From: Mytilus californianus
Lineage: Eukaryota
DNA: 64,000 bases
Direction of reading: 5' to 3'
Assembly: GCF_021869535.1 (NCBI RefSeq)
Contig: NW_026262734.1
Coordinates: forward strand, 52,204,001-52,268,000
Part shown: positions 7,445-62,278 of the stretch, in pieces
Position numbering within the stretch: the stretch's first letter is position 1
Layout: every line of letters begins with the position of its first letter
The notes under the pieces: model-generated
Database searches by the model: none
Told to the model about the DNA's origin: nothing
What the model saw: only the letters and a program-made list of their open reading frames with translations
Program-made: the position numbers and the translations under genes

Positions 7445-7837
7445 ATGGATATTTCAGCTGGAATTGCGAGAATGTTTAAAAACTACGAAAGATTCTCCTG
7501 TGACAAACATTTGCAAAAAGATTGGATAGAAATTTTCAATTCAATTGTGAAAGCTGATTCCGTGAAAACGAAGCGTCTTCTGGAGAAACAAGCGGATGTT
7601 AATAATAAAACTAATCTCAAAACAACAATCTTAATGTTGATATGTCAATCTTTTCCCGCCAAAAAAGAAGATGACGTGTATTCTTTAGCGATGTATTTGC
7701 TTGATAGAGGAGCAGATGTAGATGAAGTTGACGTCTTTGGGAAGACCGCTATACACTATGCAGAAAGCAATGGATTTTCAAAAACTACAAAATTACTTTT
7801 GGCGTGTTCATTGATAGACCAATTCAACCTCGTATAA
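7445..7837 (+). CDS. Mini-ankyrin-repeat protein, copy A (130 aa, single coding exon)
   Basis: ATG ORF with ANK motifs LLEKQADVN, YLLDRGADVDEVDVFGKTAIHYAESNG. 18 aa differences from copy C. Upstream inverted CCAAT and TATA; downstream AATAAA. Confidence 0.85.
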   Translation: MDISAGIARMFKNYERFSCDKHLQKDWIEIFNSIVKADSVKTKRLLEKQADVNNKTNLKTTILMLICQSFPAKKEDDVYSLAMYLLDRGADVDEVDVFGKTAIHYAESNGFSKTTKLLLACSLIDQFNLV

Positions 7838-8227
7838 GCCAAGATACGTTTCATGTCATATAAACATTTCTACAGATGCCGAAACATTGCTGACAAATAT
7901 TCATATAGCATATTTCATCATTTGTTTTGCTCATAGGAAAAGGATTGATATTTTAGAGACTTGAATAAACTTTGTCTATTATATAGATAAGTATATAATT
8001 TTTTAACAAGCTCTATTAGAAGTATTTTGACCTTGTTAGCCTCGGTGAATATCATATATCTGGGATTGATAAATCATTGTTTAAACTCATCAAAAGTCAA
8101 TAATTGTATATTACATTCCATTTACTCTCTTTTCTGTTTTGTTTACATATATTCGTGTACCTGTGTTAAATTAACTTGTCTGTTTGAACAATACAGTATA
8201 TATTTTATCATCATTTACAAATTAAAT

Positions 8228-8265
8228 TATGTACATTGTATATCTAAATAAACAAAATAAAAGAT
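8228..8265 (+). terminator. Putative poly(A) signal of copy A
   Basis: tgtacattgtata followed by AATAAA at 8247 and 8256; context aataaaagat is shared with paralogs. Confidence 0.5.
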
Positions 8266-8949
8266 CATGTAGATTTTACAGTGTTTTCATTCAACGTACA
8301 AAAAGTGATGCACTCGATCTTTATCATACATCATCTTGACTTTTAAAATTAATTACATTTTTAAACATCCCGCACTGACGAGCGTCACCAATAATGCACA
8401 TACATTTTAAAGTTAGAGTTAGAGTTGACCAGACAATCATTCAAAAATATATTTCAATAAATAAACAAATTATGTTAGAAAAACCCCTGAGATACACAGT
8501 AAGAGCCTAATTTGTGTCTAGTATCTGAATTGTATACATTATCCTCTTTTGCACAAATTAACAACTTTACATCGAGTTGCCTATAATACATGAATATAGC
8601 TACGATGACTTGATAAAAAATCTGCATGCATCTTATTTTAACATCTTGTAAGTCAAACCAGGTTTCTTATTTTTCAAGAATGAATCGAAATCATTCCCAA
8701 AATATCTATTTTTGTCACGTAGGGTTCAAAATGGGAACTGTGTAGTCCAAATCCTGTCATATTTTGCTGCACTAAAATTCTGTTCGCCCATTACAGATTT
8801 CAAAATAGAAAGCAAAATGGGAAACAAATCTGTGATTCAGGAGAACAACTTCTAAAAGGATTCGAATTTTAATTTCGGTCATGTTCACCCCCTGTTGTGG
8901 TGGGGTGCGGGATGCTTAGTCCATCTAGTTTCTACATGTCTATTTTCTG

Positions 8950-9245
8950 TTTTTTATACTGTTGTTTTGATTGTTCTCCCATTTTTTGCCATGGCGTTGT
9001 CAGTTTTTCTTCGACTTATGAGTTTGAATCTCCCTTTGGTATCTTCCGCCTCTCTTTGACATGTTTGACGTATTTGTAAATCTTATTTCCTTACTCAGTT
9101 TTTCTTAAAAGAGGGGCGAAAGATACTAGAAGGACATTCAAACTCATAGATCAAACATAAACTGACAACGCCAGGGCTAAAAAAGAAAAAGACAAACAGA
9201 AAAACAATAGTACACAAAACACAACATAGAAAACTAAAGACTATT
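8950..9245. repeat. Head-to-head pair of the gaaagataccaaagggacattcaaactc interspersed repeat
   Basis: Minus copy at ~8950-9058 and plus copy at ~9108-9245. Other family members at ~20195, 39118, 42868 (+) and ~17700, 29270 (-). Confidence 0.7.
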
Positions 9246-10483: not shown

Positions 10484-10830
10484 ATGCTTCAAAAGAAACA
10501 GTTTAAAAGTCAATGCAAACTGCATGTCCTAAAGAAGAAGTCATATTAGTGCAATTTTCTTGCAATTCCGTCAAAACCTTCTAAAATTGCTTATGAATAC
10601 AGATACCGCTCCTCTTGAGAACAAATTCCACGAAACTTTTGTAACACATATCAGATGCCACGAAAGTTTTGACGCAAAATAGGACGATTTAGAAGAAAAC
10701 TCAATTGTTGTGTTCATAAGCGTTAAACTTAGTAAAAAGTTATTTTTATTAACAAATTCGTATTAAGCGAAACAGGATTTTACCAAAGCTGCATTGATAG
10801 TCAAATAGTACAAACGAGGGGATATAAAAA
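10484..10830 (+). pseudogene. Probable decayed paralog of the mini-ankyrin family
   Basis: Collinear matches to copy A: attccgtcaaaac (SVKT, ~10565), in-frame KLL...RCHESFDAK*DDL vs RLL...ICQSFPAKKEDDV (~10585-10692), ggattttaccaaagct (~10775), gcattgatagtcaaat (~10791). Contains stops and indels. Confidence 0.45.
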
Positions 10831-11161
10831 AGAAGTGTGATTAACAATTCATTGTTTATTAAGTATCGTATCAAATATCACCAGAAGACTTGAAAAAATA
10901 ATTAATTTTATTAATCCTTTTTCCTCTACATGTGAACATGTGAATAGATACTGACACTAACACGGACAACACGTTTTCTAATTGATGGTGTGTAGTCATA
11001 GTATTTTTTCGTGGATTAGTAATCATCAGATTATCATCACATTAAAACAATGTGAAATTTGTTTCTCTTTTACTTGAGTTTTATTCTATTTCGTTAAACA
11101 TGGTATCAAGGATCTATCTATTTAAATTGACTGAAGACTTGAGAGTTCCGAAAGTCACACA

Positions 11162-11162
<1 letters not shown>

Positions 11163-11208
<46 letters not shown>
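11163..11208 (+). repeat. Pure poly(A) tract, 46 nt
   Basis: Uninterrupted A run. Confidence 0.9.
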
Positions 11209-11209
<1 letters not shown>

Positions 11210-11634: not shown

Positions 11635-13459
11635 TGAAAGACACCAAAGGAATATTACAATGCTGAAAGACACCAAAGTGATATAACAATGCTGAAAGAT
11701 ACCAAAGACATATTACAATGCTGAAAGACACCATATGGATATTACAATGCTGAAATATACCATAGGGACATTAGAATGCTGAAAGATACCAAAGGGATAT
11801 AACAATGCTGAAAGACACCAAAGGGATATAACAATGCTGAAAGATACCAAAGGGATATTACAATGCTGAAAGATACCAAAGGGATATTACAATGCTGAAA
11901 GATACCAAAGGGATATTACAATGCTGAAAGATTCCAAAGGGATATTAGAATGCTGAAAGATACCAAAGGGATATTACAATGCTGTAGGATACCAAAGGAA
12001 TATTACAATGTTGAAAGATACCAAAGTGATATTACAATGCTGAAAGACACAAAAGGGATTTAACAATGCTGAAAGATACCAAAGGGATATTACAATGCTG
12101 AAAGATTCCAAAGGGATATTAAAATGCTGAAAGATACCAAAGGGATATTACAATGCTGTAAGATACCAAAGGGATATTACAATGCTGAAAGATACCGAAG
12201 GGATATTACAATGCTGAAAGATACCAAAGGAATATTACAATGCTGAAAGATACCGAAGGGATATTACAATGCTAAAAGATATCAAAGAAATATTACAATG
12301 CTGAAATATACCAAAGGAATATTACAGTGCTGAAAGACACCAAAGAGATATTACAATGCTGAAAGATACCAAAGGGATATTAGAATGCTGAAAGATACTA
12401 AAGAGATATTACGATGCTGAAATATACCAAAGAGATATTAGAATGCTGAAAGATACCAAAGGGATATTACAATGCTGAGAGACACCAAAGAGATATTACA
12501 ATGCTGAAAGATACCAAAGGGATATTAGAATGCTGAAAGATACTAAAGAGATATTACGATGCTGAAATATACCAAAGAGATATTAGAATGCTGAAAGATA
12601 CCAAAGGGATATTACAATGCTGAGAGACACCAAAGAGATATTACAATGCTGAAAGATACCAAAGGGATATTACAATGCTGAAAGATACCAAAGGAATATT
12701 ACAATGCTGAAAGATACCGAAGAGATATTACAATGCTAAAAGATATCAAAGGAATATTACAATGCTGAAATATACCAAAGGAATATTACAGTGCTGAAAG
12801 ACACCAAAGAGATATTACAATGCTGAAAGATACCAAAGGGATATTAGAATGCTGAAAGATACTAAAGAGATATTACGATGCTGAAATATACCAAAGAGAT
12901 ATTAGAATGCTGAAAGATACCAAAGGGATATTACAATGCTGAGAGACACCAAAGAGATATTACAATGCTGAAAGATACCAAAGGGATATTAGAATGCTGA
13001 AAGATACCAAAGGGATATTACAATGCTGAGAGATACTAAAGGGATATTACAATGCTGAAAGATACCAAAGGGATATTACAATGCTGAGAGATACTAAAGG
13101 GATATTACAATGCTGAAAGATACCAAAGGGATATTACAATGCTGAAAGATACCAAAGGGATATTACAATGCTGAAAGATACCAAAGGGATATTACAATGC
13201 TGAAAGATACTAAAGGGATATTACAATGCTGAAAGATACCATAGGGATATTAGAATGCTAAAAGTTACCAAAGGGAAATTACAATGCTGAACGATACCAA
13301 AGGGATATTACAATGCTGAAAGATACCAAAGGGATATTACAATGCTGAGAGATATCAAAGGGATATTACAATGTTGAAAGACACAAAAGAGATATTACAA
13401 TGCTGAAAGATACCAAAGGGATATTACAATGCTGAAAGACACCAAAGGGATATTAGAAT
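11635..13459 (+). repeat. 29-bp minisatellite, ~63 copies
   Basis: Consensus CCAAAGGGATATTACAATGCTGAAAGATA, head-to-tail with no spacers. Confidence 0.95.
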
Positions 13460-18141: not shown

Positions 18142-18144
<3 letters not shown>

Positions 18145-18427: not shown

Positions 18428-18835
18428 ATGCCTCATCTCGGATTTAGAATGCAATTAAAAGAAAACGAAAAACCAATTTTCTGGATTGAAGAAACGTCTA
18501 TAGAAAAATCATTTGAGGAAATCATCAGCTTAGTATCCTACGGGGATTTCAATGAGGCGTATTGTCTGCTGAAGAACATATTGTATAGAACATCAAAACT
18601 CAACAACAATACAATGATGTTAATATTGATATGTCAGTTTTGTTCTTCATCAAATGAAGAAGACGTTTTACCCTTCGTTCGTTTCTTGCTAAATGGAGGT
18701 GCATGTGTGGCCGCAGTTGATAACTCTGGAAATTCTGCTATAAAATATGCTAACAAAAACGGATTATGGAAAATCAAGAAGATACTTAATGCTGAAATAA
18801 CTTTTTCAATTCTTGACCAATACAACGTTTTTTGA
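18428..18835 (+). CDS. Divergent mini-ankyrin-repeat protein, copy B (135 aa)
   Basis: ATG ORF with LICQ...EEDV...FLLNGGACVAAVDNSGNSAIKYANKNG. About 40% identity to copy A over the C-terminal ~70 aa (manual alignment). Ends SILDQYNVF. Confidence 0.75.
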   Translation: MPHLGFRMQLKENEKPIFWIEETSIEKSFEEIISLVSYGDFNEAYCLLKNILYRTSKLNNNTMMLILICQFCSSSNEEDVLPFVRFLLNGGACVAAVDNSGNSAIKYANKNGLWKIKKILNAEITFSILDQYNVF

Positions 18836-21800
18836 GTTTTTTTGAAAAGACATATGAAGAATATATTTATCAAAAGACATAAATAAGAAGTATAATATTT
18901 TTGTATCAGCTGATCGTGCGAGACCCTCATGGTTAGTCAAGGTCGTTAAACATCCCATAGTAGTAGTATCAATATATTTAATTTGTTTAAAAACCAATCA
19001 TATGTGTCAGAACAGCTAAGAAGGAATAGTCATCTGCTTTTCTAAGTGATACTGTAATATATCTCAGTTTTTATTCTTTCATACTACACTATTTAAAGAT
19101 ATTGTAAGTATGAAAACGGCTAAGTTACAGATGTGTCTGATTTTCTGATTTCTGCAAGAACCTTGCAGAAACATACAATGTCATTTTTCTGAATGCAGAT
19201 GAATAGACATGTAGTAATTTGAAAGTTTGTTTTTTTGCGGCCTGTTATTGAAGCAAGAATGGGATATACTGTATATTGTATTCCATGTAAACAATAAGAA
19301 GAAAAAAAGATAAATTCAATGGTTTTGTTTCTTTTGTATATACAATAATTTAACAAAAATAACATGTTTTCATTTATTGAGTTGTAATTGTGCTTACTTT
19401 TTGTATTCTTTAATCTCATATAACATGTAGTGTAGAAAAATAAAACATTAAAACCCTTCAACAAAGCATCTGTTTTGCATTTTTGTTTTTATCCGATTAA
19501 TGTGTACATTGTCAATACCCGAATAGCTATAGTTATCTGCAAAATTTAAACGTACCTTTCCTTCTTTAACTAGAATTTTATTCCGGTTTTAAATCGGGCT
19601 CTAGTAACTCAGTCTTAAGTTTTATGTGAAGTGCTGCGATGACTATTATTTGCTTTTTTCGTTGTTTTTTGTCATGATATTGTCTGTTTTATTTGACTTC
19701 TTCCTCATGTTGGTATTTAATTTCCGTTTGAAACTGTACCCGTTTTGAACTTTCCCTTAATGTCTGACTTTAGAATATATTCGAGTGATGCATATGTAAC
19801 AGACAATCTTGTTCTGTTCGTGAAGGAAATTTTTTTATAAACACTTTAAACATGTTAAATAATCAATCTTATTCTTACAACGGTTTTCGTTTGATAAGAC
19901 ATTAAAACAAACACACGACTTCTTATATTCGAGGCAAGCACCCTAAAAAATATTATCACCAAGTCCGCCATTGCTTTATAGCTTCCAGAGAGTAAAACGT
20001 TGGTCGGCAGTTTGATATAGTTCAGTAATTAAAGTGTCTAACGGTGCAGCATCATATTATTGCTAGTTTTTTTTTTTAATATTTGCTACGTATGTAATAA
20101 GACACATACAAGCGATATGCATCAACAACACTCAAGCCTAAGGTTAATATTAAAAGTATTTCACACACAATAATGCTATATAGATATCACTTAAAAAAAG
20201 AGACGGAAGATACCAAAGGGATTTTCAAACTCGTAATAAAGTCGAAGACAAATTGACAACGCCATTACACGAAACAAATCTTGGAAAACAACGACCAAGC
20301 AACACGAACCCAACCAAATACCGAAGACGAAAGCAGGTGCTAAAAGGGTAGTAATGCAGATGGAAATAATTATAGTATTACTTTTTGATATGACAAGGTA
20401 TTATTTCCAACAAATATTTCAATTTTTATTCTCTTTTTCTAATTGTTTTCATCATTATTACATCACATTATTTGTCAATGTCTTAATACCGTTGATAAAT
20501 TTTTAGAAAAAAAACAATAACACTAAATATGTTATATTCCATCTTCTCCTTATACCCTAAAAGTCACGTGCATAGAAAACATTTAAGTTGTCGATCTATA
20601 ACACTACACATGTGAGTATACAGAACAGCATTAACGCAACAAAAAGTTTCTTCTTTTTGTACAATAATTATCAATTTGATAGTCTAAAGCTGTTACAAAC
20701 ACGTTTTCTAATTGATAGCGTGTCCATTCAAATTCAAATAATTCATCGAAGAATCGTGATCTTCATATTGAAAAGTGTGTACCATAGTTCACTTTTGCAT
20801 TGGTTTGTTGTTTGTGGTTCTTTTTTATGTTCTATTTCTATTTTGAACGGCTGTGATCTAGCAATATGATTATCGGCACGTTTGAATTTCATTGTACAGA
20901 ATATTATTAGTTACATAGTGTGCTAGTGCCCGAAACGATATATATGGGGTCAGTAAATTCTATATGGGATGAGAGCGAATTAATCCCATATGAAATGTAC
21001 ACGGTCTCCACGCGGTTACTTTTAGTCAATCATATTCATAGAAATGTATAGGAGTTAAGACAAATATATATATATATATAAATATATATACGCAGCTACA
21101 GAACGTATGGTTTGACCAGTACATTCGATGTATCTTGTTAAAAAAAGTTTGTTTCCTGTCGGAGAAAGAACTCGGCATTAACTCTTTAATATTTGAAACC
21201 CTGAGGGTTGACTAGGGTATAGAAACATGATCACCTGCAACTCGTCTGTTCCTGCAGTAAAATAATTATGTTCCCTTGCACTTCTCCCGTTGCTGCAGTA
21301 AAATATTTGTTAAATTAGGTATACGTTTTGCTGTGCAGGATGTATACATTAGCAGTCATGTTTGGTCGGAATTGGGGAGTGGGATACATCCCATGCCTGA
21401 TGAAGGACATGTGACACACTTTAATGCGTCATGCACGTTTAACAACAAGGTTGCAACAACTCTCTGAGGGTTCCGTAGATTTTGACACCTATTTTTGGTG
21501 CCCTTTCTCCAAGTGGCTGTCTATATTCATGATATTATTCACACTGCATCCTGGTTGTCTATCCTTAAAGAACCTACCTGTTTTATAAATTTTTATTGTT
21601 CTCGACCTAAATATGCTTGTATTTATGAGAAAAATGCGACAATATCAGGTTTTGCAATATTTAAAATTTGTACTCATAATGTCAGTAGTTATTTTCCGTC
21701 ATTAAATGTTTGCAATCGTATTAATTAGATTTAATATATTTGGCAGATGTGAAGGATTCCGAATAATAAATACAAGCATTAATTTCTGAATTTAAGTTAC

Positions 21801-27699: not shown

Positions 27700-28092
27700 A
27701 TGGATCTTTCAGCTGGAATTGCGTTGATGTTTAAAAACTACGAAAGATTCTCCTGTGACAAAAAATTGCAAAAAGATTGGATGGAAATTTTCAATTCAAT
27801 TGTGAAAGCAGATTCCGTGACAACGAAGCGTCTACTAGAGAAACAGTTGGATGTTAATATTAAAACCAACCTCAAAACAACAATATTAATGTTAATATGT
27901 AAAACTTTTCCCGCAAATAAAGAAGATGACGTGTATTCTTTAGCTCTGTATTTGCTTAATAGAGGAGCAAATGTGGATGAAGTTGATGTCTTTGGGAAGA
28001 CGGCTGTACATTATGCAGAAAGCAATGGAATGTCAAAAACTACAAAATTACTTTTGTCGTGTGCATTGATTCACCAATTCAACCTCGTTTGA
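27700..28092 (+). CDS. Mini-ankyrin-repeat protein, copy C (130 aa)
   Basis: Intact 393-bp ORF collinear with copy A, with conserved promoter and poly(A) signal. Confidence 0.85.
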   Translation: MDLSAGIALMFKNYERFSCDKKLQKDWMEIFNSIVKADSVTTKRLLEKQLDVNIKTNLKTTILMLICKTFPANKEDDVYSLALYLLNRGANVDEVDVFGKTAVHYAESNGMSKTTKLLLSCALIHQFNLV

Positions 28093-28514: not shown

Positions 28515-31500
28515 AGATCATATAGATTTTGCAGTGTTTTTATTTAACGTACAAAAAGCGATGCGCTCGATCTTTATGAGACATCATCTTGACTGCAGAG
28601 TAAACAGGGTTTTATACATCCCGCACTAACGAACGTCACCCACAATGCACATTCAATGTAATGCTGAATTGGAGTTGACCATACAATCATTCAAAAAGAT
28701 ATCTTAGAAGTAAATTTGTTGTGTTTGAAAAACCCCTGAGGTACACAAATAGAGCCTTATTTGTGTCTAGCATCTGCATAGTATACATTACTCCTCTTTT
28801 GTACAAATTAACGAATTTAAATAAAGTTGCCTTTTATACATGTATATAGCTACGATTACTTGATAAAAAATCTACACGCATCTTATTCATTTTGTTTTTT
28901 GAATATCTAGTTAGTCGAACCCCGAGTCTTATGTTTCCAAGAATGAATCTAAAACGTTCCCGAAAATATCTATTTTTGTCACTGCGGGGTTCAAAATGGG
29001 AAATGTGTAGGCCAAAATGCTGTTTATTTTTGCTGCACCAAGTTTCTGTTTGTATATTACAGATTTCAAAATAGAAAGCAAAATGGAAAACAAATCTGTG
29101 ATTCAGGAGCACAACTTCTTAAATGATTCGACTTTTAATTTCGGTTATGTTCAACCCCTGTTTTTGGTGAGGTTCGTGTTGTTTAGTCTTGTAGTCTTTA
29201 TCTGACTATTTTCTGTTTTTCATACTGTTATTTATCTTGTGATAATTTTTCGTTCTCTAGCCATGGCTTTGTCAGTTTTTCATCGACTTATGAGTTTGAA
29301 TATCCTTTTGTATTTTCCGCCTCTCTTTGACGTATTTGCAAATCTGGTTTACTTGATCAGTTTTTCTTAGTTGCAATCATACCACATCTCCTTATTGTTA
29401 TATCATTTGAAGATCTTGTATTGCTGATCATTTATGGTATTAACTGTTTCTCTCGATGTTGTGAAGATAATAACAAAAACCCAAAACATGGTAAAACTAT
29501 TCATTAAAGTCTAATAACACCAATTTTGATTCATCTCACATTTTGTCGTCAACATGTTGACAAGTTGGATGATCTTTGCATTCTGTAAATTTCTGTACCT
29601 CTCAGAAGTTGTCTTATCTTAAACGGCTTTCATGATAATATACAAGTTTTGTATTTTTTTCCTTATGTTATATTTTTAGCCTTAGCTGTTGGCGGTCATT
29701 TTAGTTGGCAGGTTGGATCACCGGACACAATTACAAATGTATATTTACCCTAATACTAGTACTGGTTGTGGCCAAGTTAGGTTAGAATTTGCACGGTAGC
29801 TTCAGAAAGAGAGGGGGTTGCTGATGAGAATAGCTCATACTAGCCCCTTTGGCCACTTGGAAGATTGACAAAATCGTTCTATTATACTTTCTTAGATAAT
29901 TATGGCATCAACTAGAAAATCTGTACATTCTAAAATTTCTTATTTGGTGTTTGGTGGACGCTCTCATATCAGCCAGTTACTAAATTTTAATGTGCGTCTA
30001 CTCCTCTGCAATGAATGTAATATTTATTCAAAGCTGTTGGTTATTTTTGATACGAGTCGTTTTAAACAAAGGACGTTTAAAAAGTTATCAATGAATCAAA
30101 TTTCGTAGTGTATAAAGGATTTGAACTTAGATTATTCATTTGAAGATATTGTCAATAACAAATGTATGCAGCAGTAATTTTAGAAATAATTGTTCGTTGA
30201 TTCTTAAAACGGATAGCCTGATCTTGTTCATCTAACATTTCAAAATGTGGTATCATGACTAGGAAACTAAATAAAAGTACTTTCTTTTTTTGTAAAGATA
30301 GCAATTCTTATATTAGATAGATGAACCCGGTGTTGCTTTGCAAAAAAACACTTCAAATTCACAAAACTGAAAAATGTAATGAATTACATTAATTAAACTT
30401 CCGATGCAACAAATTAAATAAGTTAGAATTTGACTTTCCAATCGAACTCGTATTTTGAAATCTTTACCTAATCAGGCTAACTATCAAATGTGTTTGTCGC
30501 TTTCATCGTTACGCGTTACTTTGTCTTGCGGTGATTCTTGCATGTTTCATTTATAATTCCATCAGTTGTGAAGAGGTATTATAGTCCATTTATTCTTCCC
30601 TTTTTTACAAATGTATCGATTGTGAGTATGTAATCTAAACAATTCATGATTTTGCTTTGATATATTGTTTAACTGACTATAAATATAAGCATGCTTGGAA
30701 GGATAACATGTTTTAAGTCGGACTCGGACTTCTTTTAAACTTAGTCTTACTGTGCGTATTGCTGTGTGTTTGTTTTTTTAACATTGGCTAGAGGTATAGG
30801 GGGAGAATTGAGATCTCCCAAAACATGTTAAACACCGCTGCATTTTTTCGCCTTGCCAAGTCAGGAACCTCTGGCTTTTTTTAGTCTTGTAATTTTTTTT
30901 TTAATATTGGTTCATTGATATGTTTCAGAGTTTAGTGTGACGTCCATTTTCGCTGAACTAGTATACATATTGTTTAGGGGCCAGCTGAAGCCCGCCTAAT
31001 GGTGCGAGATTTTCTCTCTGTATTGAAGATCCATTAGTGGCAGTGGGCTGTTTTCTGCTGTTTGGTCGGGTTGTTGTCTCTTTGACACATTCCACGTTTC
31101 CATTTTCCATTTTATTGTTCTATCAATTAATTACATTAATTAATTCATATATATTTTTTTGTTTTTAATTAAATAAAGTAGCTGTTGTAATATATTGGTA
31201 ATATCAAATATGTTCAACAATTTCACACACTGAAAACAAAGGCTTAGAGTAAATGTACTTCCTATTCATTTGTCATCTGAGGTTTCACGGACATAAGAGG
31301 TTGTTCTTGCTTTAGGTTTGTTTTTTGTTTTAGGTTCCCTACTGTCTTATGTTCTTTGAATCCCACACTTTAAGTATCAAACGTGCCCGTATAAAAATAA
31401 AAGCACATTTATGACACGGTTCTTGTTACTATAAATTTAAATGTTAGACAATTTGTTAATTTGTATGTTTGTTAGAAATCATATCTGCTAATTGAAAATA

Positions 31501-39839: not shown

Positions 39840-40090
39840 AAGATCATATTACAATACAAAAACATTTAAGAATACGTTTTCGCAGAGGATCATGAAGCTT
39901 ACATTGACTCAATCTGAATTCACGGACTCTATAAACAACATCATCATAAGTTTTAAAATACAATATCCCGTTTGTAATACATTCTCTACAAGTACAGCCA
40001 AATTTCAAATCTAGCAATCTAGTAATGATAAAACGTAATTTGTGGTAACGAAATCCCTGTTTTGTCATTTGATAATTGCGTGCTGTTATA
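39840..40090 (-). mobile_element. Penelope-like RT C-terminal fragment
   Basis: KQGFRYHKLR...GI...YDDVVYRV resembles the PLE RT thumb region. Confidence 0.6.
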
Positions 40091-40449
40091 ATCAGTTTTC
40101 CGATTTTCTTAAGTTATCTCTTGCATTCGACTTTTCAAATTAACTGCTTGTTAACTTCTCCAATGATAAATTCAGATATTGCTGAGTGTAATGTTACGAA
40201 TGAATAGCGGAAAATTGCAAGAGAGAAATTTAGTCAAATTGTTTTTTATGAAAATTTCTCAACCTGATCAGAACTGGTTAAAAGGCATACATGACTAGAG
40301 AAACTGGTAAGTTATAATTAATTAAAAAGACGATATAATTTGATACAAGTAAACCCAATCATTAGCAGGGTATCGTTTTCATTTACAATTCGATGTGTAG
40401 GCAGGTTTTGAAATTTGTACGTTTATAATTACAAAACAATAAGAATTAA

Positions 40450-40510
40450 TCTTGCAATCTGATTGGAAGAATTAACCTACACGGTTTTTAACAGAAAAAG
40501 TATAAAACAT
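40450..40510 (+). promoter_or_regulatory. Core promoter of copy D
   Basis: Invariant 17-mer at 40450-40466; TATAAAA at 40501-40507. Confidence 0.6.
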
Positions 40511-40580
40511 TAGACCTGAAATACATGAAAGGCAAAATATAATAATTGAAGTTGTTAGTCATATCAGTGCATGCTTAAAA

Positions 40581-40973
40581 ATGGATCTTTCAGCAGGAAT
40601 TGCGATGATGTTTAAAAACTACGAAAGATTTTCCTGCGAAAAACATTTACAAAAAGATTTAATAGAAATTTTCTATTCAATTGTGAATGCTGACTCCGTA
40701 AAAACGCATCGTCTTCTGGAGAAACAATTGGATATAAATATTAAAACCAATCTCAAAACAACAATCTTAATGTTGATATGCCAATCTTTTCCTACAAATA
40801 AAGAAGATGACGTGTATTCTCTAGCTCTGTATTTGCTTAATAGAGGAGCCAATGTGGATGAAGTTGATGTCTTTGGAAAGACGGCTATACACTATGCAGA
40901 AAGCAATGGATTTTCAAAAACTAGAAAATTACTTTTGTCGTGTGCATTGATTGACCAATTCAACCTCGGTTGA
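40581..40973 (+). CDS. Mini-ankyrin-repeat protein, copy D (130 aa)
   Basis: Intact 393-bp ORF with the same ANK motifs. Ends DQFNLG. Confidence 0.85.
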   Translation: MDLSAGIAMMFKNYERFSCEKHLQKDLIEIFYSIVNADSVKTHRLLEKQLDINIKTNLKTTILMLICQSFPTNKEDDVYSLALYLLNRGANVDEVDVFGKTAIHYAESNGFSKTRKLLLSCALIDQFNLG

Positions 40974-41522
40974 ATCAAGATAAGTACCATCTCATATAAC
41001 AATTTCTACAGATGCCAAAAAACAATGCTGACAGCTATTCATCAGTCGATTTTCTTTTTATTTGCTCGTAGGAACAAGAATGATGATTCAGACACTTGAA
41101 TATTTTTGTCATATAAACAATAGTCATTATTGATTTTCCGAACGAGTGGATCCGCATCTGAAATTACAAGCATTTATACTTAAACCCAAAGTATGTTATT
41201 CAAGTTAATACATAAATAAAACATTTATGCCAATGACTGGTGATTAATATCAAAGCATCGGAACAAGCAGAAATTACATATAAAATAAAAATAAAACACC
41301 TACTTTGCAATATTAAACTATTTTTGGAATGTACATATGTTTAATTATTCCAGAGAGTTGAGATACATTGAAATTATGTACAGATAGTATTTTCAATTTT
41401 ATATCATTTCACTTTTGTTTGTGTAGTTTCAAGCGCATGCGTTCGATTTATTTGTACAGTTCACAGAATATATCATCATCGTTTTCGAATTAAAGATTGT
41501 ATATTGTATAACTTAATATTTG

Positions 41523-41528
41523 AATAAA
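41523..41528 (+). terminator. Putative poly(A) signal of copy D
   Basis: AATAAA after tgtatattgtataac, conserved context. Confidence 0.5.
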
Positions 41529-44500
41529 AGATAATACAGATTCTCGCCTTTTTTGTATTCATAAATTATTCACATGACTATGGTGCGATACAGGATGCTG
41601 AATTTCGACATTTTGAAGTCTGTCAGCAGATCAGTGCTAGTTACCAGAAAATATTGTTGATACTATATTTTCGTCTAGTACATTTTTATATAAATATTAA
41701 CGAATTCTCGTACTTATCTTTTTCATATGGGTAATTAAACAAAATGATTTTCCATTAAGGTATCATCCTTATATTGTTTCTTTCAGTTAGCTAGACATTT
41801 GTAATTTGGTCTTTTACATGTACATGCATGTACTCGATAAATGTGGTTTTCAGGCATTCTTCGTACTTAGCGTTAGAATAATAGGTACATGTTTTTTCTT
41901 TCCTAGTGTACTATATTTGTTGCCAATCACTAGTATGTACTCCTTTTTTTACTGCAGGAAATATTTCATAGCATATTTTCTCTTACACAAATCTTTCATT
42001 CGGTCAACGCCACCCCCTTTTTTCAACCAAACGAACTCGATATATGAAGGTTTAAGACTAAAAGTATTACCTAGAGTAAGTTTTACTTCTCATTTGAATC
42101 TTATGTAACAGTGACATTTTTCAGAAATAGATATTATGTCTTTTTGCTTGAGTTTTCGAATAAGTGTACGAGAAAAATCCAGCAGAATTTTGAAAGTCAC
42201 CGAAAAAATTAAGGTAGAGTCGAAATGAAGCATACATTTTGCCTTTCACGATAGCACCTATAGACACAGTAAAAAGCTGTTATACGTGTTCGTTAATTAG
42301 CAAAAAGCGTTGCACTCTCTCTACTTGAGGCACAAGGTTTGATGACTCCATTTCAGACATGGCTGAGCCAACAAAATTTTATACATCTTCACCAGAAGAC
42401 GTCGCAAAACTTGAGTATCGATTTTACAGCTGGATTATAGAAGTTCATGTATTACTAGATTTCTTTACCCCAGGCAACAATGGAGGTTTTGAATCCTTAA
42501 TAAAATCAAAGAGATTTCATAGAAGTATACATGCTATATTTAAAATAATATGGGTACACAGTTAGCGTTCAATTCATATAATTTGTGTTTAGCATCTGTG
42601 CTGCATACTTTACTGCTCTATTGTCCAAATGTTAAAACGCCGATGTTGCCATTATAGGTGTATCTAACTACAACGTATACATTTACATATTGATGTGATT
42701 TTATGACAGTATGGTAAGCATACAGTTTATTTAAAGATCGGAAACGAATCTGCATGCGCCAACCATGTCAACAAAAATATATTTAAACAATTGGGTTCTT
42801 ATGATAAATCTCAAACATGTATACAATCTCCTACGTATTACATGATTACTAACAATAACTTCTATGAAAGAGAGGCGAAAGATAACAAAGGGATAATCAA
42901 ACTCACATTCAAACTGACAATACAATTTCAAAGACGGAAACACGGCCAAAAGACACACAAAAGTATACTATATAGAAATCTAAAGACAGAGCAACACGAA
43001 TCCCACAAAAACCGAGGATGATCTCAGAATCAACGGAAGGGTAAGCAGAGGACGGGATTGTGGTTACGATAATAAGAACATATCCGTGGTGATCTGTGAA
43101 ACAGAAATTCAATAATGGTCAACTAACTCGTGATGGCGTCTTTGATTTTTTTGGAGATCATAATACTGATCATTTTGTCATTTTTTGTTTTATTTTAGCC
43201 ACTTTAGTTCTGCAAAAAACAGAAAAAGGATATAAATCGTATTTCCAGTGCTAGAATTCCTACACGTCGTCGACTGACAATTTCGGCCTTGTTGATCTAT
43301 TCGAGACTTTGTACAGCCAATACATTTAGATTTGATCTATGTAAACTTAAAGTTTCTTTGAGTAGACGTATTCTTACAGGTTATTAATTTAACAGTATAG
43401 TTTATAACATTACTATGTTTTGCTATGTAATTATGAAAACTAATGGTTCTACATCTTGTAGATAACATGTACTTATATTTTAGAGTTCACAAGATCATGG
43501 CATTCTCAGACTGTTTTTTAAACTTTCTTCACTACATCCGTTGGTTGTGTAATGTTTGATAATTTAGCATGGGGAAACCTTATTTATCTTTTAGCGTTAA
43601 GCACTTGCGAGTACTCATAGATCGGTACTTTGTGTATTTTGTCTTTTTGTTATTTGTTTTGATGTTTTATGGAGATCTGATGCTTCAAACGCATATTTTC
43701 CTACTGATTTTTGTCAGGTTTGCTCATTTGTTGTGCTGTAATACCACTGTTCCAAGTTAGAGAGTTGAATTTTAACTCCGCGTCATTCCTTATGTGCCTG
43801 TCCCAAATCAAGATCTTGTAAATCACTGGTTGCCGTTGGGTGCTGCCGTTCATAATTATTTGTTGTTTATTGTTTTATTATAAATCGAACCGTTTTTGGT
43901 TTTCTTGTTTGAATTGTTTCACATTTGTCTTGACACAGTATGCGATATTGCTTACTTTTCTCATTAATAAAGACCGTGGGGTGACCAAAGTTGCTAACAT
44001 CCACGTCCTCAAGTTGCAATCATCATGATAATATCACATTTCCCTATTCTTATATTCATTGTAGATATTGTTCTGCTGATCGTTTATGTCATTCACAATT
44101 TCTCTCTATCGTTTAGATTTTTTCAGCTAATAACCAAAAAACGCAAAAATTGGTAAAAAATCATCATCAAATACTAATAACTCAGATAAGGAGTCACCTC
44201 ACTTGTTTTGTCAAAAATGAAAGAAGGTGGAAGTTGAACTAAAAGAAATATACAAAAAATCGTTCTTTTTACTTTCTTAGATGATTATGACATCAACTTG
44301 AAAATCTGTTCATCTTGATATCATACTTAATGTTCGGTGTCAAATATTGCCTTTACAGTACCTAATCATTTACGCCAACAACCTTATTTTAAATGTGCGT
44401 CTAAACCTCTGCTATGTATGGTAGTTATTTTCATAGCTGTTGGTCCCTTTATATGCGAGTCGATTCATATAAAGGTAGTATGTATTTGTCCAAGGCCTTT

Positions 44501-49217: not shown

Positions 49218-52200
49218 TTTTTTTTTTTTTTTTTTAACAACAAATAAATATTCTTTATTCTTCAGAATGCTTGTTACAATTTTACTTCACTGTCCAAGCT
49301 CCAATAAAGTATCCCTGTGAAATACTTTCTGAGCATCCAGGACAATACTCAGAATATAATAAAATATAAAAGTTTTTTTCTATTATATCAATCTTTTTAA
49401 ATTAATGAAAAATACATTTTGAGATACTGTTTTGTTCTCATTCATAACCCTTAGTATTTCTTTTATTAACATATTATACACATCTAAAAATTTAAGTTTT
49501 TGCTCGGAGACATAATATGACTTGTAAATACAAAAACCTAGAACCGTCAAAAGAAAGTTAAAACCATAATACCCCTGGTCTGATATTTTGTATCCAAATA
49601 CTATATGTTTTGCTAATACCTTGTTATGAAAATTCATTTTTGCTAGAAGATAATGTACCTTCTCCCAAAAATCTTTCAAAAATGAACATGTAATAAAAAA
49701 ATGCAAGTAATCTTCTTCTTCTGTTTTACAAAAATTGCATTTAAAATTCTCAGATATTTTCCATCTTAAAAGTAACTGCTTTGTATGAATAATATACTGA
49801 AGTAGTTTCCATCTTAAAATTTTCAACTTGTTTTCTGTTAAAATTTTAAATATAAAATCGTATACAAATGTCATATGTGGTGTGTATTCTAATTTTAAAT
49901 ATCTTGTCCAAATATTAATACCGATTGGCTTTGTATATTTTTTATCAATTAAAGTATTATAGAGTATTTTATTGTTGATATATTTTGCTTCAATTTGTTT
50001 ATTTTGCCAACTTAATTTATCCTTACATATATTGATTATTCTCTTAACGGAGTTTTCTTTTTTTTAAACTTGCAGGTATTCTTTTGGAATGCAAGATTTT
50101 AACATCTTAAACTCTGCAATCCAGTTTGATTTATTCTTTAACTTTTTTAAAATAAAGCTTTCGGATAATTTTCCCTCACTATCCAGTATGTCGTTAATAT
50201 ACACCAATCCACTTTTAACCCAGTTCGGGAAGAACAAACTTTTATTGCGATTTTTAATATATTTATTTCCCCAAATAATCTGTTTTCTGATACCCGAAAA
50301 GTGATCAGAAAATTTTGTTAAACCTCCTCCTGTTTACACCCAACTTGAAATTACTTGTAAATAAAAATCAGGCATGTTTCTAAGTTCATTTAGTGATTTT
50401 ATGTTATCTAAATTCATTTTAAAGACAAGAAATTTTTTACCAAGAGTGTTAAAATATTTAGTAGGAATAATCTTCCAGTTCGGCAGTTCGGTTGTTGTTA
50501 ATTTGGAGACCCATGAAGCTTTCAGTGTTGTAAAATAACTGTTAAAATCAATCATTTTTAATCTCCCTTTTTGGTATTCTCCGATAAGTGTGTTTCTTTT
50601 TACTTTGTCATTTTTTTCCCTCCCAAATATATTTGAAACAGCAGCTTTCAATTTCTTTTAGGTAAATATCTGGAACTTTGCACGAAGTAGCCAAAAATGT
50701 GAATTTTGGTAATATTAAAGATTTTATGATCAATAGTTTCCCAACCATTGTTAATTTTCTTTTTTCCCAAGTTTTAATTAATGATTTCATGTTTTCTTTT
50801 TTAGGTTCCCAATTTAACTTTTCACATTGGTGTTTATCGTGACCAAAATAAATGCCTAAAGCTTTAACGGGTTTGTCTGTCCAGCGTAAGCCTTCAATTT
50901 TATCTATGCTATTTTTAAGCGCCCCAATCCAAATTCCTTCTGTTTTATTACGGTTTAACTTCAGACCTGAGAAAGAACCAAATTTTTCAATTATATTCAT
51001 AGCTTTTGATATATCTGATTTTGAACTACAAAAAAGTGTTGTATCATCAGCCAATTGTGATATTTTGATGCTGTGTGTTTTATTATCTATAGTAATACGA
51101 AAACCTTTAATGTCTGAGGTTTGCCTTAATCGCTCGGCCATAATTTCGACTGATAAAACAAAAAGTAAAGCCGATAAAGGACATCCTTGACGAATTCCTC
51201 TAGAGTTTTCAAAAATTTCGGATACCCATCCATTATTTATCACACACGTCTGTATTCCCTTATATAGTGTTTCCACCCATGATATGAATGATTCATTAAA
51301 ACCAAAATGCTTTAAAACGCTTAACATGAATTCCCATTCCAAAGAATCGAGAGCTTTTGTGAAATCAACAAATATTATAGCCCCATCTATTCCGTTTGAT
51401 TCTGCATAGTCCATTATATCTTGGATTTGCTTTAAATTAAATCCAATAAAACGATTTTTTACATATCCGGTTTGATCTTCATTAATTAGTTTAGGAAGAA
51501 GCTCTTTTAGTCTCTGTGCCAAAACATGAGATAATATTTTCAAATCTACATTTAATAATGATATTGGGCGATAATTGTCCAAAGATAATGGGTCATTTTT
51601 TTTAAATAATAAAGATAGAACACCTGTTCGTTGTGTATATGATAAAAGTTTTTCCTCGTGTCCTTTATTTAAAACTTTTACTAACATTGTTTTAATTTTT
51701 CCCAAAACGTCTTATAAAATTCTAATGTTAAACCATCTAGACCAGGTGATTTATTTAGCTTCATCTTATTAACAGCATTTGTACATTCATCTATAGTAAC
51801 CTCCCCGTCACAAATTTTAAAGTCGTCTCCATTTATCTCCTTTTCCATGACAGTATCGCCTACATATTTATGTAGTAGATTTTTATCCGGATTCGTGGTT
51901 GTATATAATACTTTATAATAGTTTTTTATCATTTCTAGAATTTGTTCCTGATTTGTTGTTACCTCGTTATTTTCAATTCTGAGTTTGTTAATAGATTTCT
52001 TAACTTGTCGCTGTTTTTCTAAACCTAGAAAATAAGAATTATTTTTTTCCCCCAGTTCTATCCATTTTTCCCTTGACCTTATTTGAGCCCCCTTTGCCTT
52101 ATTTTCATAAATTTTGTCCAATTGTAACTCTAATTGTTTAATATTATTTGTTATTGTTTCATCTTCGTTTAATTGTTCATCTCTAAGTGTCGTAAAGTGT

Positions 52201-52716
52201 TCTAATTCTCTTTCTAATTTTCTTGTTGTCTCCCTTGATAATTTCGATTTTCTTTTACAGTAAAGAATAGATTCGTCCCTAATTTCGATTTTAAGATTGT
52301 CCCATAATAGACGGATATCGCTAATATCACTATTGTTTAAACGATTTTCGAACTTATTAATTACTCTGTTGATTGTTTTTTTATATTCAATATCTTTTAA
52401 AATAGAATTATTCAGTTTCCAGTACCCATTTCCTCTTTCAGAAGCTCCTGTCCTAAAGTTTAAAACCATCCCTTGATGGTCTGTCACTTTAATTAGTGCC
52501 GGTTTAATTTTACAATATTCAACGAGAGATTGAAATTCTTTTCCAATTAAAATTAAATCTATCCTACTGGCTTGTGTCTTATCCTTTCTTCTCCATGTAA
52601 ACTGTTGTGTATTTTCATGTAAGAAACGCCAAATATCTATAAAATTATGATTTTTCATAAAGGTTTTTAAACTATTTACAGGCTCAGAAAACTTTGTATT
52701 TTTATTAACGCTTTTC
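49218..52716 (-). mobile_element. 5'-truncated L1/Tx1-clade non-LTR retrotransposon with poly(A) tail
   Basis: EN C-terminal half (IDIWR, FTW, SRID, DH), RT (YRPISLLNVD, RQGCPLS, QLADD) and CCHC CNFC...H...C. Few frameshifts. T18 at 49218-49235 and tttatt at 49254. Confidence 0.92.
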
Positions 52717-53830: not shown

Positions 53831-53856
53831 GTAAGTCATATCAGTGCGTGCTTAAA

Positions 53857-54249
53857 ATGGATCTTTCAGCAGGAATTGCGATGATGTTTAAAAACTACGA
53901 AAGATTCTCTTGTGACAAACATTTACAAAGAGATTTGATGGAAATTTTCAATTCAATTTTGAATGCTGACTCCGTGAATACACGGCGTCTTCTGGAGAAA
54001 CAATCGGATGTTAATATTAAAACCAATCTTAAAACAACAATCTTGATGTTGATATGCCAATCTTTTCCTGCAAATAAAGAAGATGACGTGTATTCTTTGG
54101 TTGTGTATTTGCTAAATAGAGGAGCAGATGTGGATGAAGTTGATGTCTTTGGAAAGACCGCTATCAACTATGCAGAAAGCAATGGATATTCAAAAACTAA
54201 AAAATTGCTTTTGTCATGTGCCTTGATTGACCGATTCAACCTCGTATAA
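53857..54249 (+). CDS. Mini-ankyrin-repeat protein, copy E (130 aa)
   Basis: ATG at 53857 in context cttaaaATGG (the ORF track starts 3 codons earlier at GTG). Intact 393-bp ORF. Confidence 0.85.
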   Translation: MDLSAGIAMMFKNYERFSCDKHLQRDLMEIFNSILNADSVNTRRLLEKQSDVNIKTNLKTTILMLICQSFPANKEDDVYSLVVYLLNRGADVDEVDVFGKTAINYAESNGYSKTKKLLLSCALIDRFNLV

Positions 54250-60800: not shown

Positions 60801-61631
60801 ACTCATGTTGAAAGCCTGAATTTGACTATGAGATGAATTGCAGGCACAAACACTATTCATTTCTTTGTGGTTTTATCTGTATGAAAATAAGAAGATGTGG
60901 TATGATTGCCAATGAAACAAATCTTTCTCAGATACCAAATGACGTAGATTTAAGCCACTATATGTCAACGTACCACAATTACATATATCATTCCATGTTT
61001 GATTATCTATAGGGATAGTAGATACTGAAAAATAAAACATATAACTTGCATAACGAAAGTGCACGGAGAATATATGGAATGATCAGTGTTATATTTGTTA
61101 TTCGATATATTACATGTAGTTATAATCAGTTACACAATTTTATGAGATGTTTTTTGCAGTCGACTTTTTAAAATGACTGTTTCCTAACTTTTGACATTTA
61201 TTTTATTGTTCGAGTACATAATTTTTTTTCTATTCGCAGTTTTAATTCATACTGTATGGATCATTTAAAAGACTTGTTTTTCTTATGTTCATTTAACTTT
61301 ATGTTAATAAACTTATATATATATATAGACATATCAGTACAATGTGAAGAATTAACTACCATGGGATTATAAATATTGTAGTCAATAGAAACAAATGATA
61401 GAATATGTTTCTCTGATAATTTATTCTGAACATGCTGAGTGTAGTGTTCCGAATGAATATAGTGGAAATTTACACGAAAGAAATTTAATCAACGTGTTTT
61501 TATGAAATTTCTCAACCTCATTAAAACCGGGTCAAATGCATACAGAATTAGAGAAACTGATCAGTATAATCTTATAAAAGAGACGACATTATTAGGTAGG
61601 TTTTACACCTTCACACGATTAAAATAACAAA

Positions 61632-61690
61632 TCTTGCAATCTGATTGGTAGAAATAACCTAGAGGGTTTTCAACAGAAAAGTATAAACGT
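61632..61690 (+). promoter_or_regulatory. Core promoter of copy F
   Basis: 17-mer at 61632-61648; TATAAA at 61682-61687. The upstream GGATATCGTTTTCATTTACAC block is missing. Confidence 0.5.
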
Positions 61691-61750
61691 TAGACTGAAA
61701 ATACAAAATATAATAACTTCACTGGCTAGTCCTATCAGTGGGTGCTTAAA

Positions 61751-62278
61751 ATGGATCTTTCAGCAGGAATTGCGATGATGTTTAAAAACTACGAAAGATT
61801 CATCTGCGAAAAATATTTACAAAGAGATTTGATGGAAATTTTCAATTCAATTTTGAATGCCGACTCTGTAAAAACGCAGCGTCTTCTGGAGAAACAATCG
61901 GATGTTAATATTAAAACCAATCTCAAAACAACAATCTTGATGTTGATATGCCAATATTTTCCTGCAAGTAAAGAAGATGACGTGTATTCTTTAGCTATGT
62001 ATTTACTTAACAGAGGAGCAAATGTGGATGAAGTTGATGTCTTTGGGAAGACGGCTATACACTATGCAAATGCAATGGCTTTTCAAAAACTAAAAAAATA
62101 CTTTTGTCATGTGCATTTATTGACCGGTTCAACCTCGTATAAACCAAGATACGTTTCATATCATATAACCAGTTCTACAAATGCCAAAATTATTCAAAAG
62201 GCAAATTACTTTCGTTGTTTTTTTTTTCTCGCGGGAAAAGGAATGCTCTTTGGAGACTTGAATAATTATGTCGCATAA
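61751..62278 (+). pseudogene. Mini-ankyrin copy F, 1-bp deletion near 62068 giving a frameshifted tail
   Basis: tatgca-aatgcaatggc vs tatgcagaaagcaatgga in paralogs. The native-frame stop is at 62140-62142 (392 bp instead of 393), and the native tail GFSKTKKILLSCAFIDRFNLV is intact but out of frame. Confidence 0.7.

What the first reader, a model, noticed from the sequence alone, without database searches (positions are those of the whole stretch)
7445..62278. Tandem array of intronless ~130-aa mini-ankyrin genes under purifying selection, with birth-and-death turnover
Six recognisable genes plus a relic. Each has a conserved ~25-aa N-terminal segment, a degenerate first ANK, a second ANK with an inserted loop (FPAKKEDD) and a third ANK, and no other domain. 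A manual count between E and F over 106 codons gave ~13 synonymous and 11 amino-acid-changing codons, consistent with dN/dS well below 1, so these are functional genes. Cys19, Cys67 and Cys121 are invariant in the close paralogs. Single-exon structure and a looped ANK recall ANKRD34-type proteins (weak resemblance from memory). As minimal ANK-only proteins they could be adaptor, decoy or binder modules, and I do not recognise them as a described family.
Basis: partly seen in the sequence, partly recalled or inferred. Interest (0 to 1): 0.7.

Follow-up and report, generated by a model that had tools for sequence, protein, structure and literature searches.

The report
Mussel tandem mini-ankyrin gene family
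The window holds six tandem, intronless mussel genes for tiny three-repeat ankyrin proteins (one broken by a 1-base deletion), part of a family of over 100 uncharacterised, selectively constrained genes seen so far only in Mytilus, whose binding partner and function are unknown.

Summary
Observation confirmed. Six + strand ORFs of about 130 aa lie at the stated places. Four of the six reach Pfam Ank_2 above its cut-off.

Among eight intact close paralogs dN/dS is 0.28 (bootstrap 0.18-0.38). Each gene has its own invariant CCAAT box, TATA box and AAAATGG start context, with no conserved acceptor site. Contigs from a related species cover only about 40544-41270, which fits an unspliced mRNA of about 0.7 kb.

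F carries a 1-nt deletion. I found no seventh "relic" copy.

The array is only part of the picture. This genome (probably Mytilus californianus) has at least 122 six-frame matches in small open frames, in arrays on 11 large contigs. dN/dS is 0.2-0.6 in almost every comparison; two near-identical pairs are uninformative. Named relatives are only Mytilus "hypothetical" proteins.

The AlphaFold2 model is a minimal ankyrin domain (N-cap, one elongated repeat, C-cap). Fold and sequence searches return only generic ankyrin domains.

The likeliest role is an intracellular protein binder or regulator, but the partner is unknown. One RNA run gave no reads on gene D.

The ANKRD34 resemblance is unsupported. 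I class this as a new, uncharacterised member of a known kind, of moderate interest.

The parts
7445..7837 (+). Gene A, intact 130-aa mini-ankyrin ORF. Inverted CCAAT box about 109 bp and TATA box about 70 bp upstream of the ATG.
   Evidence: (Ank_2 E 2.6e-8, above cut-off)
18428..18835 (+). Gene B, intact 135-aa member of a divergent subfamily (33% identical to A). Its close twin B' lies 41 kb upstream, outside the window.
   Evidence: family HMM E 7e-47; B versus B': dN 0.061, dS 0.212
27700..28092 (+). Gene C, intact 130-aa ORF. Its closest paralog is Z, outside the window (dS 0.18).
40450..40508 (+). Core promoter of gene D. The 17-nt block TCTTGCAATCTGATTGG (40450-40466) is identical in all ten close paralogs and holds an inverted CCAAT box plus a TTGCAAT half-site. 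The TATA box GTATAAAAC lies at 40500-40508.
   Evidence: (alignment A2)
40581..40973 (+). Gene D, intact 130-aa ORF. It was used as the family reference and for the AlphaFold2 model.
40544..41270 (+). Inferred unspliced transcript of gene D, about 0.7 kb. It runs from 37 nt upstream of the ATG to about 300 nt past the stop, with an AATAAA at 41215-41220.
   Evidence: contigs of runs X3 and X4 (a related species, library type not on record) cover only this stretch plus interspersed repeats. One search gives the sequence. Contigs cannot prove transcript ends.
53857..54249 (+). Gene E, intact 130-aa ORF. A non-LTR retrotransposon remnant (49383-52658, minus strand) lies upstream of its promoter.
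61751..62139 (+). Gene F, a frameshifted copy. A 1-nt deletion after 62068 shifts the frame. The homologous C-terminus continues in another frame to 62139, while the frame as read runs on to 62278.

Best explanation
Shown: the window holds six members (five intact, one frameshifted) of a 12-member local array of autonomous, intronless genes. Each unit has a CCAAT box and a TATA box within about 120 bp of the ATG, and a 390-405 nt ORF. From the contigs laid on gene D I infer a 5' UTR of roughly 40-50 nt and a 3' UTR of about 270-300 nt with an AATAAA signal.

Shown: the proteins have no signal peptide or membrane segment by inspection. The model is a minimal ankyrin domain. A low-confidence N-terminal helix is followed by an N-cap-like helix pair. 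Then comes one internal repeat about 7 residues longer than canonical, with Cys in place of the second Ala of the TPLHLAA motif. The last element is a C-cap repeat of the DxFGKTAxxYA type.

Shown: the array belongs to a family of more than 100 such genes in tandem arrays on 11 large contigs. Database names come only from Mytilus species. The family grows by tandem and block duplication, loses copies by frameshifts and stops, and is under purifying selection.

Inferred: like other stand-alone three- or four-repeat ankyrin proteins (myotrophin/V-1, NRARP, INK4, viral vankyrins), each protein probably binds and sequesters or regulates one intracellular partner stoichiometrically. The compact, intronless, TATA-box design and the lack of reads in one RNA sample fit tissue-restricted or inducible expression. 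The partner and pathway are unknown.
For: ORFs and domain.

Selection: dN/dS has a median of 0.29 over 28 pairs. The mean is 0.28, with a bootstrap range of 0.18-0.38 and no replicate of 200 above 0.46. In eight other arrays it is 0.18-0.61, apart from two uninformative pairs: one near-identical and one with saturated dS.

Own promoter: alignment A2 shows the invariant 17-nt CCAAT block, the TATA box and the AAAATGG start context.

Stand-alone gene models of the same length exist in M. galloprovincialis and M. edulis. The consecutive accessions VDI10215-VDI10217 fit the same array there.

Transcript-like coverage is limited to 40544-41270 in two runs of a related species.

Family size: at least 64 protein matches and at least 122 profile matches, almost all in open frames of 112-190 aa.

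Fold: pLDDT 83.6 and pTM 0.77. The best structural neighbours are all ankyrin domains. They include the three-repeat glutaminase tail (Z 9.8), Bcl-3 (Z 9.0) and myotrophin/V-1 (Z 8.9, 90 of 117 residues). The last repeat aligns to the DARPin C-cap.

Turnover: the F deletion, the stop in H, I versus J at dS 0.026, and matching dS for B'/B (0.21) and Z/C (0.18).
Against: Expression is not firmly shown. The one raw-read RNA run (X5, about 6% of it read, 10.3 million reads) gave no read on gene D. The library type of X3 and X4 is not on record, and their contigs are only 93-97% like D, so they may come from orthologs or paralogs.

No binding partner, localisation or phenotype is known. The functional statement rests on analogy with other small ankyrin proteins.

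Variation among paralogs is scattered and not concentrated on the usual ankyrin binding face. I judged this by eye from alignment A1 and did not test it statistically. So nothing points to a diversifying-binder role.

One M. coruscus gene model joins a mini-ankyrin ORF to a C1q domain.

Restriction to Mytilus rests on a word-indexed protein search with a length filter. The full HMMER search was swamped by giant ankyrin proteins.
Confidence: 0.75

Rival explanations
1. The ORFs are first exons of larger spliced genes, for example ankyrin-C1q fusions, and not complete genes.
For: The M. coruscus model P0185 ('COL8A', 264 aa) joins a mini-ankyrin ORF to a C1q domain. The ankyrin part is 81% identical to D and lacks only the last residue. 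In most copies the last sense codon starts with GT, which could serve as a donor site.
Against: There is no C1q-like exon anywhere in the window. The nearest same-strand C1q exon is at C154:52381969, about 44 kb beyond the last array member. All M. galloprovincialis models and the M. edulis model are stand-alone. The stop codon and about 100 nt after it are conserved (83% identity). Transcript-like contigs run straight through the stop into the 3' UTR. C1q proteins are secreted, and these ORFs have no signal peptide.
Confidence: 0.05
2. The array is non-functional. The ORFs stay open only because the copies are young or are homogenised by gene conversion.
For: F and H are broken. One RNA run gave no reads on D. 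The I/J pair has dN/dS near 1, but on very few changes.
Against: dS among copies is 0.18-0.44, so there has been ample time for decay. Yet eight of the ten close copies (A/C-J type) keep full-length frames with dN/dS 0.28. Third codon positions and flanks diverge far more than positions 1 and 2. Copies of 130 aa are kept in M. galloprovincialis at 82-87% identity. Distant arrays with dS 0.6-1.0 still have dN/dS 0.2-0.3.
Confidence: 0.05
3. The genes are cargo of, or derive from, a mobile element or virus and spread selfishly, not as host genes.
For: They are intronless, compact, present in over 100 copies and spread over many chromosomes. Interspersed repeats and a retrotransposon lie between copies. 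Small ankyrin-only genes are typical of polydnaviruses, poxviruses and giant viruses (general knowledge).
Against: Copies sit in same-strand tandem arrays 8-21 kb apart. Homology is limited to about 0.45 kb upstream and 0.2-1.5 kb downstream. No terminal direct or inverted repeats frame the D unit. The 170-bp repeats near the genes are a general high-copy element at varying positions. No transposase, integrase or viral gene accompanies them in the window. The promoter is a standard CCAAT/TATA type.
Confidence: 0.07

Closest known systems
Myotrophin / V-1 (118-aa stand-alone ankyrin protein that binds actin capping protein)
   Same: Similar size, an ankyrin-only design of about three repeats, and cytosolic. 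It is a structural neighbour with Z 8.9, rmsd 3.2 and 90 aligned residues of 117.
   Different: There is no specific sequence relationship; it is absent from the top 60 sequence matches. To my knowledge myotrophin is a conserved, spliced gene and not a large family. The mussel proteins have an extra N-terminal helix, an elongated middle repeat and a family-specific Cys. The Z score is tied with many unrelated ankyrin domains.
NRARP (about 114 aa, intronless, Notch-regulated ankyrin repeat protein)
   Same: From general knowledge, it is a single-exon gene for a minimal ankyrin-only protein that works as a stoichiometric regulator.
   Different: It was not recovered by any search here. NRARP is a conserved one- or two-copy gene across bilaterians and not a lineage-specific array. 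The resemblance is one of design only.
Designed N1C/N2C ankyrin proteins (DARPins, 3ANK) and their natural capping repeats
   Same: These are the best sequence and Foldseek matches. The last mussel repeat aligns with the DARPin C-cap motif (DKFGKTAFD..NG), and the first helix pair behaves like an N-cap.
   Different: They are synthetic consensus proteins. The match reflects closeness to the ankyrin consensus, not ancestry.
Vankyrins and other viral I-kappa-B-like ankyrin-only proteins
   Same: Small ankyrin-only proteins encoded by multigene families. I-kappa-B family ankyrin domains (Bcl-3 Z 9.0, I-kappa-B-alpha Z 8.3) are among the structural neighbours.
   Different: Those proteins have four or more repeats and match I-kappa-B in sequence. 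Nothing of the kind was seen here, and the Z scores are tied with generic ankyrin domains.
ANKRD34 family
   Same: A single coding exon and ankyrin repeats (from memory).
   Different: ANKRD34 proteins are several times longer, with a long non-ankyrin tail (from memory). No search linked the two, although the length filter of the word search would have excluded them.

Membership tests
Ankyrin repeat superfamily (Pfam clan Ank; Ank_2 PF12796) | Sequence match to the Ank_2/Ank/Ank_4 models above the curated cut-off | tested here: met
   A, C, D and E score 30.6-34.8 bits on Ank_2 against a cut-off of 27.3. B (17.4) and F (23.9) fall below it but match the family HMM at E 7e-47 and 4e-46.
Ankyrin repeat superfamily (Pfam clan Ank; Ank_2 PF12796) | Stacked helix-turn-helix repeats with beta-hairpin loops | tested here: met
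   The AlphaFold2 model has pLDDT 83.6 and pTM 0.77 with three helix pairs. All top structural matches are ankyrin domains, with Z up to 10.
Mytilus mini-ankyrin family (defined here, alignments A4 and A6) | A single ORF of 112-190 aa holding an N-terminal extension, an N-cap, one elongated repeat with Cys at repeat position 12, and a C-cap with the D..G.TA..Y motif | tested here: met
   Alignments A4 and A6 show Cys67, Asp96, Ala102 and Tyr105 invariant in 22 diverse members. All six window copies carry them.
ANKRD34-type proteins | A long protein (several hundred residues) with N-terminal ankyrin repeats and a long C-terminal region | tested here: not met
   The ORFs end after 130-135 aa at a conserved stop. 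The family definition is from memory and was not checked against a reference sequence.
ANKRD34-type proteins | Specific sequence similarity to ANKRD34 members | not tested
   No ANKRD34 sequence was available by reference. The word search excludes proteins longer than 1.75 times the query.
I-kappa-B / vankyrin | Four or more ankyrin repeats with specific similarity to I-kappa-B ankyrin domains | tested here: not met
   Only about three helix pairs are present. Bcl-3 and I-kappa-B-alpha appear only as tied generic structural neighbours and not among the sequence matches.
Myotrophin / NRARP | Orthology-level sequence similarity | tested here: not met
   Neither is among the best 60 of the PDB matches by sequence or profile at E up to 1. 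Only fold-level similarity to V-1 was seen.

The most novel reading that the evidence does not exclude
The family of over 100 members is a mussel-specific set of inducible intracellular decoys or regulators. Each small ankyrin domain would bind and tune one component of the greatly expanded mussel innate-immune or cell-death machinery, for example ankyrin-bearing STAND/NLR-like receptors or NF-kappa-B/I-kappa-B-type factors, much as viral vankyrins do. Copy-number variation would then contribute to differences in immunity between individuals.
Probability: 0.12. Interest if true: 0.7.

Novelty: new member of a known kind. Interest (0 to 1): 0.4.

Why it matters
Stand-alone ankyrin domains of about 130 aa are nature's version of the DARPin scaffold. 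A family of over 100 compact, constrained and easily expressed natural variants would be a ready panel for finding partners by pull-down.

Mussels are a model for gene presence-absence variation. In M. galloprovincialis, Ank_2 is among the most frequent domains in the dispensable gene set (supplement of PMC7653742). That paper does not single out this family. Identifying it as a large, tandemly evolving, uncharacterised part of the ankyrin complement gives such surveys a defined target.

No function is known yet, so the present value is descriptive.

Tried and rejected
- Full HMMER profile search of 1.84 billion representatives. It returned 153,624 hits led by giant multi-repeat ankyrin proteins, so it says nothing about the family's range.
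- ESM Atlas. Only generic ankyrin clusters came back.
- Foldseek PDB, VIA-align wide search and PDB sequence searches. Only generic or designed ankyrin domains appeared, with no specific natural relative.
Nothing scored below E 0.1 apart from F's out-of-frame tail.
- Mobile-element cargo idea. No framing repeats were found, only a common 170-bp interspersed repeat.
- C1q fusion idea. There is no C1q exon in the window.
- Rfam on the whole window. No match reached a gathering score.
- Literature. No paper describes this family.
I could therefore not inspect the M. galloprovincialis contigs, their gene models or the origin of the ENA and Logan contigs.
- Reads were laid on gene D only. The other five genes have no read evidence.
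Full report
**What is in the window.** The ORF listing finds six + strand ORFs of 130-135 aa at 7445, 18428, 27700, 40581, 53857 (ATG) and 61751. I call them A to F. A, C, D and E are 84-86% identical in protein. F is 73% identical over its read-through frame. B is a divergent relative at 33%.

Pfam Ank_2 is above its gathering score for A, C, D and E (E 2.6e-8 to 5e-7). It is below the score for B and F. A family HMM built later scores all six at E 4e-46 to 1e-54 in a six-frame scan of the window. Nothing else scores below E 0.1 except the out-of-frame tail of F. So there are six copies and no separate relic.

F has lost one base after window 62068 relative to D and E. Its homologous C-terminus continues in another frame to 62139.

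E versus F over the first 106 codons gives 13 synonymous and 11 replacement codons, with dN 0.049 and dS 0.259. Cys19, Cys67 and Cys121 are present in A, C, D and E.

**Selection.** I added the copies just outside the window, giving ten close paralogs, eight of them intact.
- Pairwise Nei-Gojobori dN is 0.03-0.12 and dS is 0.18-0.44, with a median dN/dS of 0.29.
- The mean ratio is 0.28. A codon bootstrap gives 0.18-0.38, and none of 200 replicates exceeds 0.46.
- Mean pairwise identity is 91% and 94% at codon positions 1 and 2. It is 82% at position 3 and 65-80% in the alignable flanks.

The coding sequence is therefore constrained as protein, not merely young. The same holds in eight other arrays of the family, where dN/dS is 0.18-0.61 at dS up to 1.0. 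Two pairs there are uninformative: one is near-identical and one has saturated dS.

**Gene structure.** The upstream regions of the ten close paralogs were aligned (A2). They share a 17-nt block, TCTTGCAATCTGATTGG, identical in every copy. It holds an inverted CCAAT box of the classic CCAATCAG type and lies 86-119 bp before the ATG. A TATAAA box follows 26-39 bp later, and the start context is AAAATGG. There is no conserved acceptor site. Most other subfamilies also have a TATA-like motif 40-100 bp before the ATG. In a genome that is 70% A+T this alone is weak evidence.

Downstream, the stop codon and about 100 nt after it are 83% conserved. Gene D has an AATAAA at 41215-41220.

**Read evidence for gene D (on 37600-43599).**
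- DNA run X2 covers the whole stretch.
- Raw-read RNA run X5 gave no read on the gene. About 6% of the run was read, 10.3 million reads. Its only reads fell on interspersed repeats.
- Two runs of a related species, X3 and X4, come from one study and their library type is not on record. Their contigs lie only on 40544-41270 and on the repeats. This stretch runs from 37 nt before the ATG to about 300 nt after the stop, uninterrupted.

That pattern is what an unspliced mRNA of about 0.7 kb would give. Contigs cannot prove transcript ends, and at 93-97% identity they may derive from orthologs or paralogs. I treat transcription of the family as likely and expression of D in this species as unproven.

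**A much larger family.** The window is C154:52204001-52268000 of a 1.65-Gb assembly in 175 contigs. From memory this matches the Mytilus californianus reference, and an earlier scan note also calls it the California mussel.

The local array has 12 members between 52.18 and 52.34 Mb, all on the same strand and 8-21 kb apart except for one gap of about 43 kb before H. In order they are B', Z, A, B, C, D, E, F, G, H, I and J. H has a premature stop. H, I and J are near-identical (I versus J dS 0.026). The pairs B'/B (dS 0.21) and Z/C (dS 0.18) have the same spacing, which indicates duplication of a two-gene block.

Genome-wide, gene D finds at least 64 matches and a 21-member profile finds at least 122 at E up to 1e-8. 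These lie in arrays on C1, C2, C13, C24, C35, C46, C88, C99, C110, C121, C132, C143, C154 and C165. Almost all sit in open frames of 112-190 aa. Roughly one in six shows stops or is split between frames.

Twenty further members were extracted. They share the same plan. In a 22-sequence alignment only Cys67, Asp96, Ala102 and Tyr105 are invariant besides Met1.

**Relatives elsewhere.** Three word-indexed searches of 5.8 billion proteins were run, with D and with alignments A4 and A6. Significant hits with a species name came only from Mytilus. They are M. galloprovincialis 'hypothetical predicted protein', M. edulis 'unnamed protein product' and one M. coruscus model. The next hits are ordinary multi-repeat ankyrin proteins from bacteria and algae.

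The M. galloprovincialis copies are 82-87% identical. They carry consecutive accessions VDI10215-VDI10217, which fits the same tandem array, and in a tree they group with the A/Z/C clade.

The full HMMER search was swamped by giant ankyrin proteins and gave no information on range. Restriction to Mytilus is therefore provisional. Unannotated mytilid genomes could not be searched.

**One awkward gene model.** M. coruscus 'COL8A' (264 aa) joins a mini-ankyrin ORF, minus its last residue, to a C1q domain. The window contains no C1q-like sequence. The nearest same-strand C1q exon is at C154:52381969, well beyond the array. With the conserved stop and 3' UTR, and the stand-alone models in two other species, I read this as a merged prediction.

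**Protein.** AlphaFold2 with alignment A4 gives pLDDT 83.6 and pTM 0.77. The elements are:
- a low-confidence helix at residues 3-15;
- helix pairs at 21-35/39-51, 56-69/72-86 and 102-108/112-129;
- a hairpin loop at 87-101.

The middle repeat is about 7 residues longer than canonical, and the extra length is modelled as longer helices. The last repeat aligns with the C-capping repeat used in DARPins. The first pair resembles an N-cap. The protein is thus a natural N-cap, one repeat, C-cap domain.

Foldseek and an all-against-representatives structural search return only ankyrin domains, with tied scores. Examples are the glutaminase three-repeat tail at Z 9.8, Bcl-3 at 9.0, myotrophin/V-1 at 8.9 and the designed 3ANK at 8.7. 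Sequence searches of the PDB and the ESM Atlas give only consensus-like ankyrin proteins.

By inspection there is no signal peptide or membrane segment. Many members end in a short acidic-then-hydrophobic tail (DQFNLV, LLDQNLF, ENIFIFF) of unknown meaning.

**Mechanism.** What is shown: the gene units are autonomous, the fold is ankyrin, the proteins are constrained, and the family evolves by birth and death. What is inferred: the proteins act as intracellular binders that sequester or regulate a partner, as myotrophin, NRARP, INK4 proteins and viral vankyrins do.

Differences among close paralogs are scattered and not concentrated on the usual binding face. I judged this by eye only. With dN/dS near 0.3, nothing suggests an arms-race binder. 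Compact, intronless, TATA-box genes are often inducible or tissue-restricted. That would fit the empty RNA sample, but it is conjecture.

**Context and novelty.** In M. galloprovincialis, Ank_2 is among the most frequent domains in the dispensable gene set (supplement of PMC7653742). That statement covers all ankyrin genes, not this family. Four literature searches found no description of the family.

I class it as a new, uncharacterised member of a known kind, namely stand-alone ankyrin proteins. It is notable for its copy number and intronless arrays.

Noticed in passing
window 11635-13459: A 29-bp minisatellite with about 63 copies and 89% matches between copies (consensus TGAAAGATACCAAAGGGATATTACAATGC). 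It lies between genes A and B.
   Followed up: no
window 49383-52658 (minus strand): Remains of a non-LTR retrotransposon lie between the upstream homology block of gene E and its promoter. RVT_1 matches at E 4e-36 (50611-51705) and zf-RVT at E 1e-10 (49386-49874), next to a 325-aa ORF with no Pfam match. Rfam at gathering threshold found no RNA family anywhere in the window.
   Followed up: partly
window 39119-39291, 42867-43027, 9105-9242, 8939-9057, 29151-29328, 20191-20341: A 170-bp interspersed repeat of very high copy number lies 1-2 kb from several of the genes. Summed contig depth is about 1e5 in DNA run X2. It is the only part of 37600-43599 with reads in RNA run X5.
   Followed up: partly
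P0185 (M. coruscus 'COL8A', 264 aa); G000:C154:52381969-52382343: A public gene model fuses a mini-ankyrin ORF to a C1q domain. In this genome the nearest same-strand C1q exon lies about 44 kb beyond the last array member. This is probably a merged prediction.
   Followed up: partly
G000:C154:52181470-52232089 (partly in the window: B 18428-18835, C 27700-28092): The two-gene block [B', Z] is duplicated as [B, C]. Spacing is similar (8.6 and 9.3 kb) and dS matches (0.21 and 0.18).
   Followed up: partly
G000: C1 15.45-15.60 Mb, C121 2.24-2.30 and 54.5-54.9 Mb, C99 40.6-40.9 Mb, C24 39.1-41.1 Mb, C46 2.15-2.26 Mb and others: There are many further tandem arrays of small single-ORF ankyrin genes of 112-190 aa, including four nearly identical copies 4.3 kb apart at C24:41058675-41071945. 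dN/dS is 0.18-0.61 in the eight arrays tested, apart from two uninformative pairs.
   Followed up: partly
window 40200-40260 and 42089 (run X3): Single contigs from the related species end at 40258 and begin at 42089 and continue in sequence unlike the window. These may be structural differences or paralog joins near gene D (table 7).
   Followed up: no
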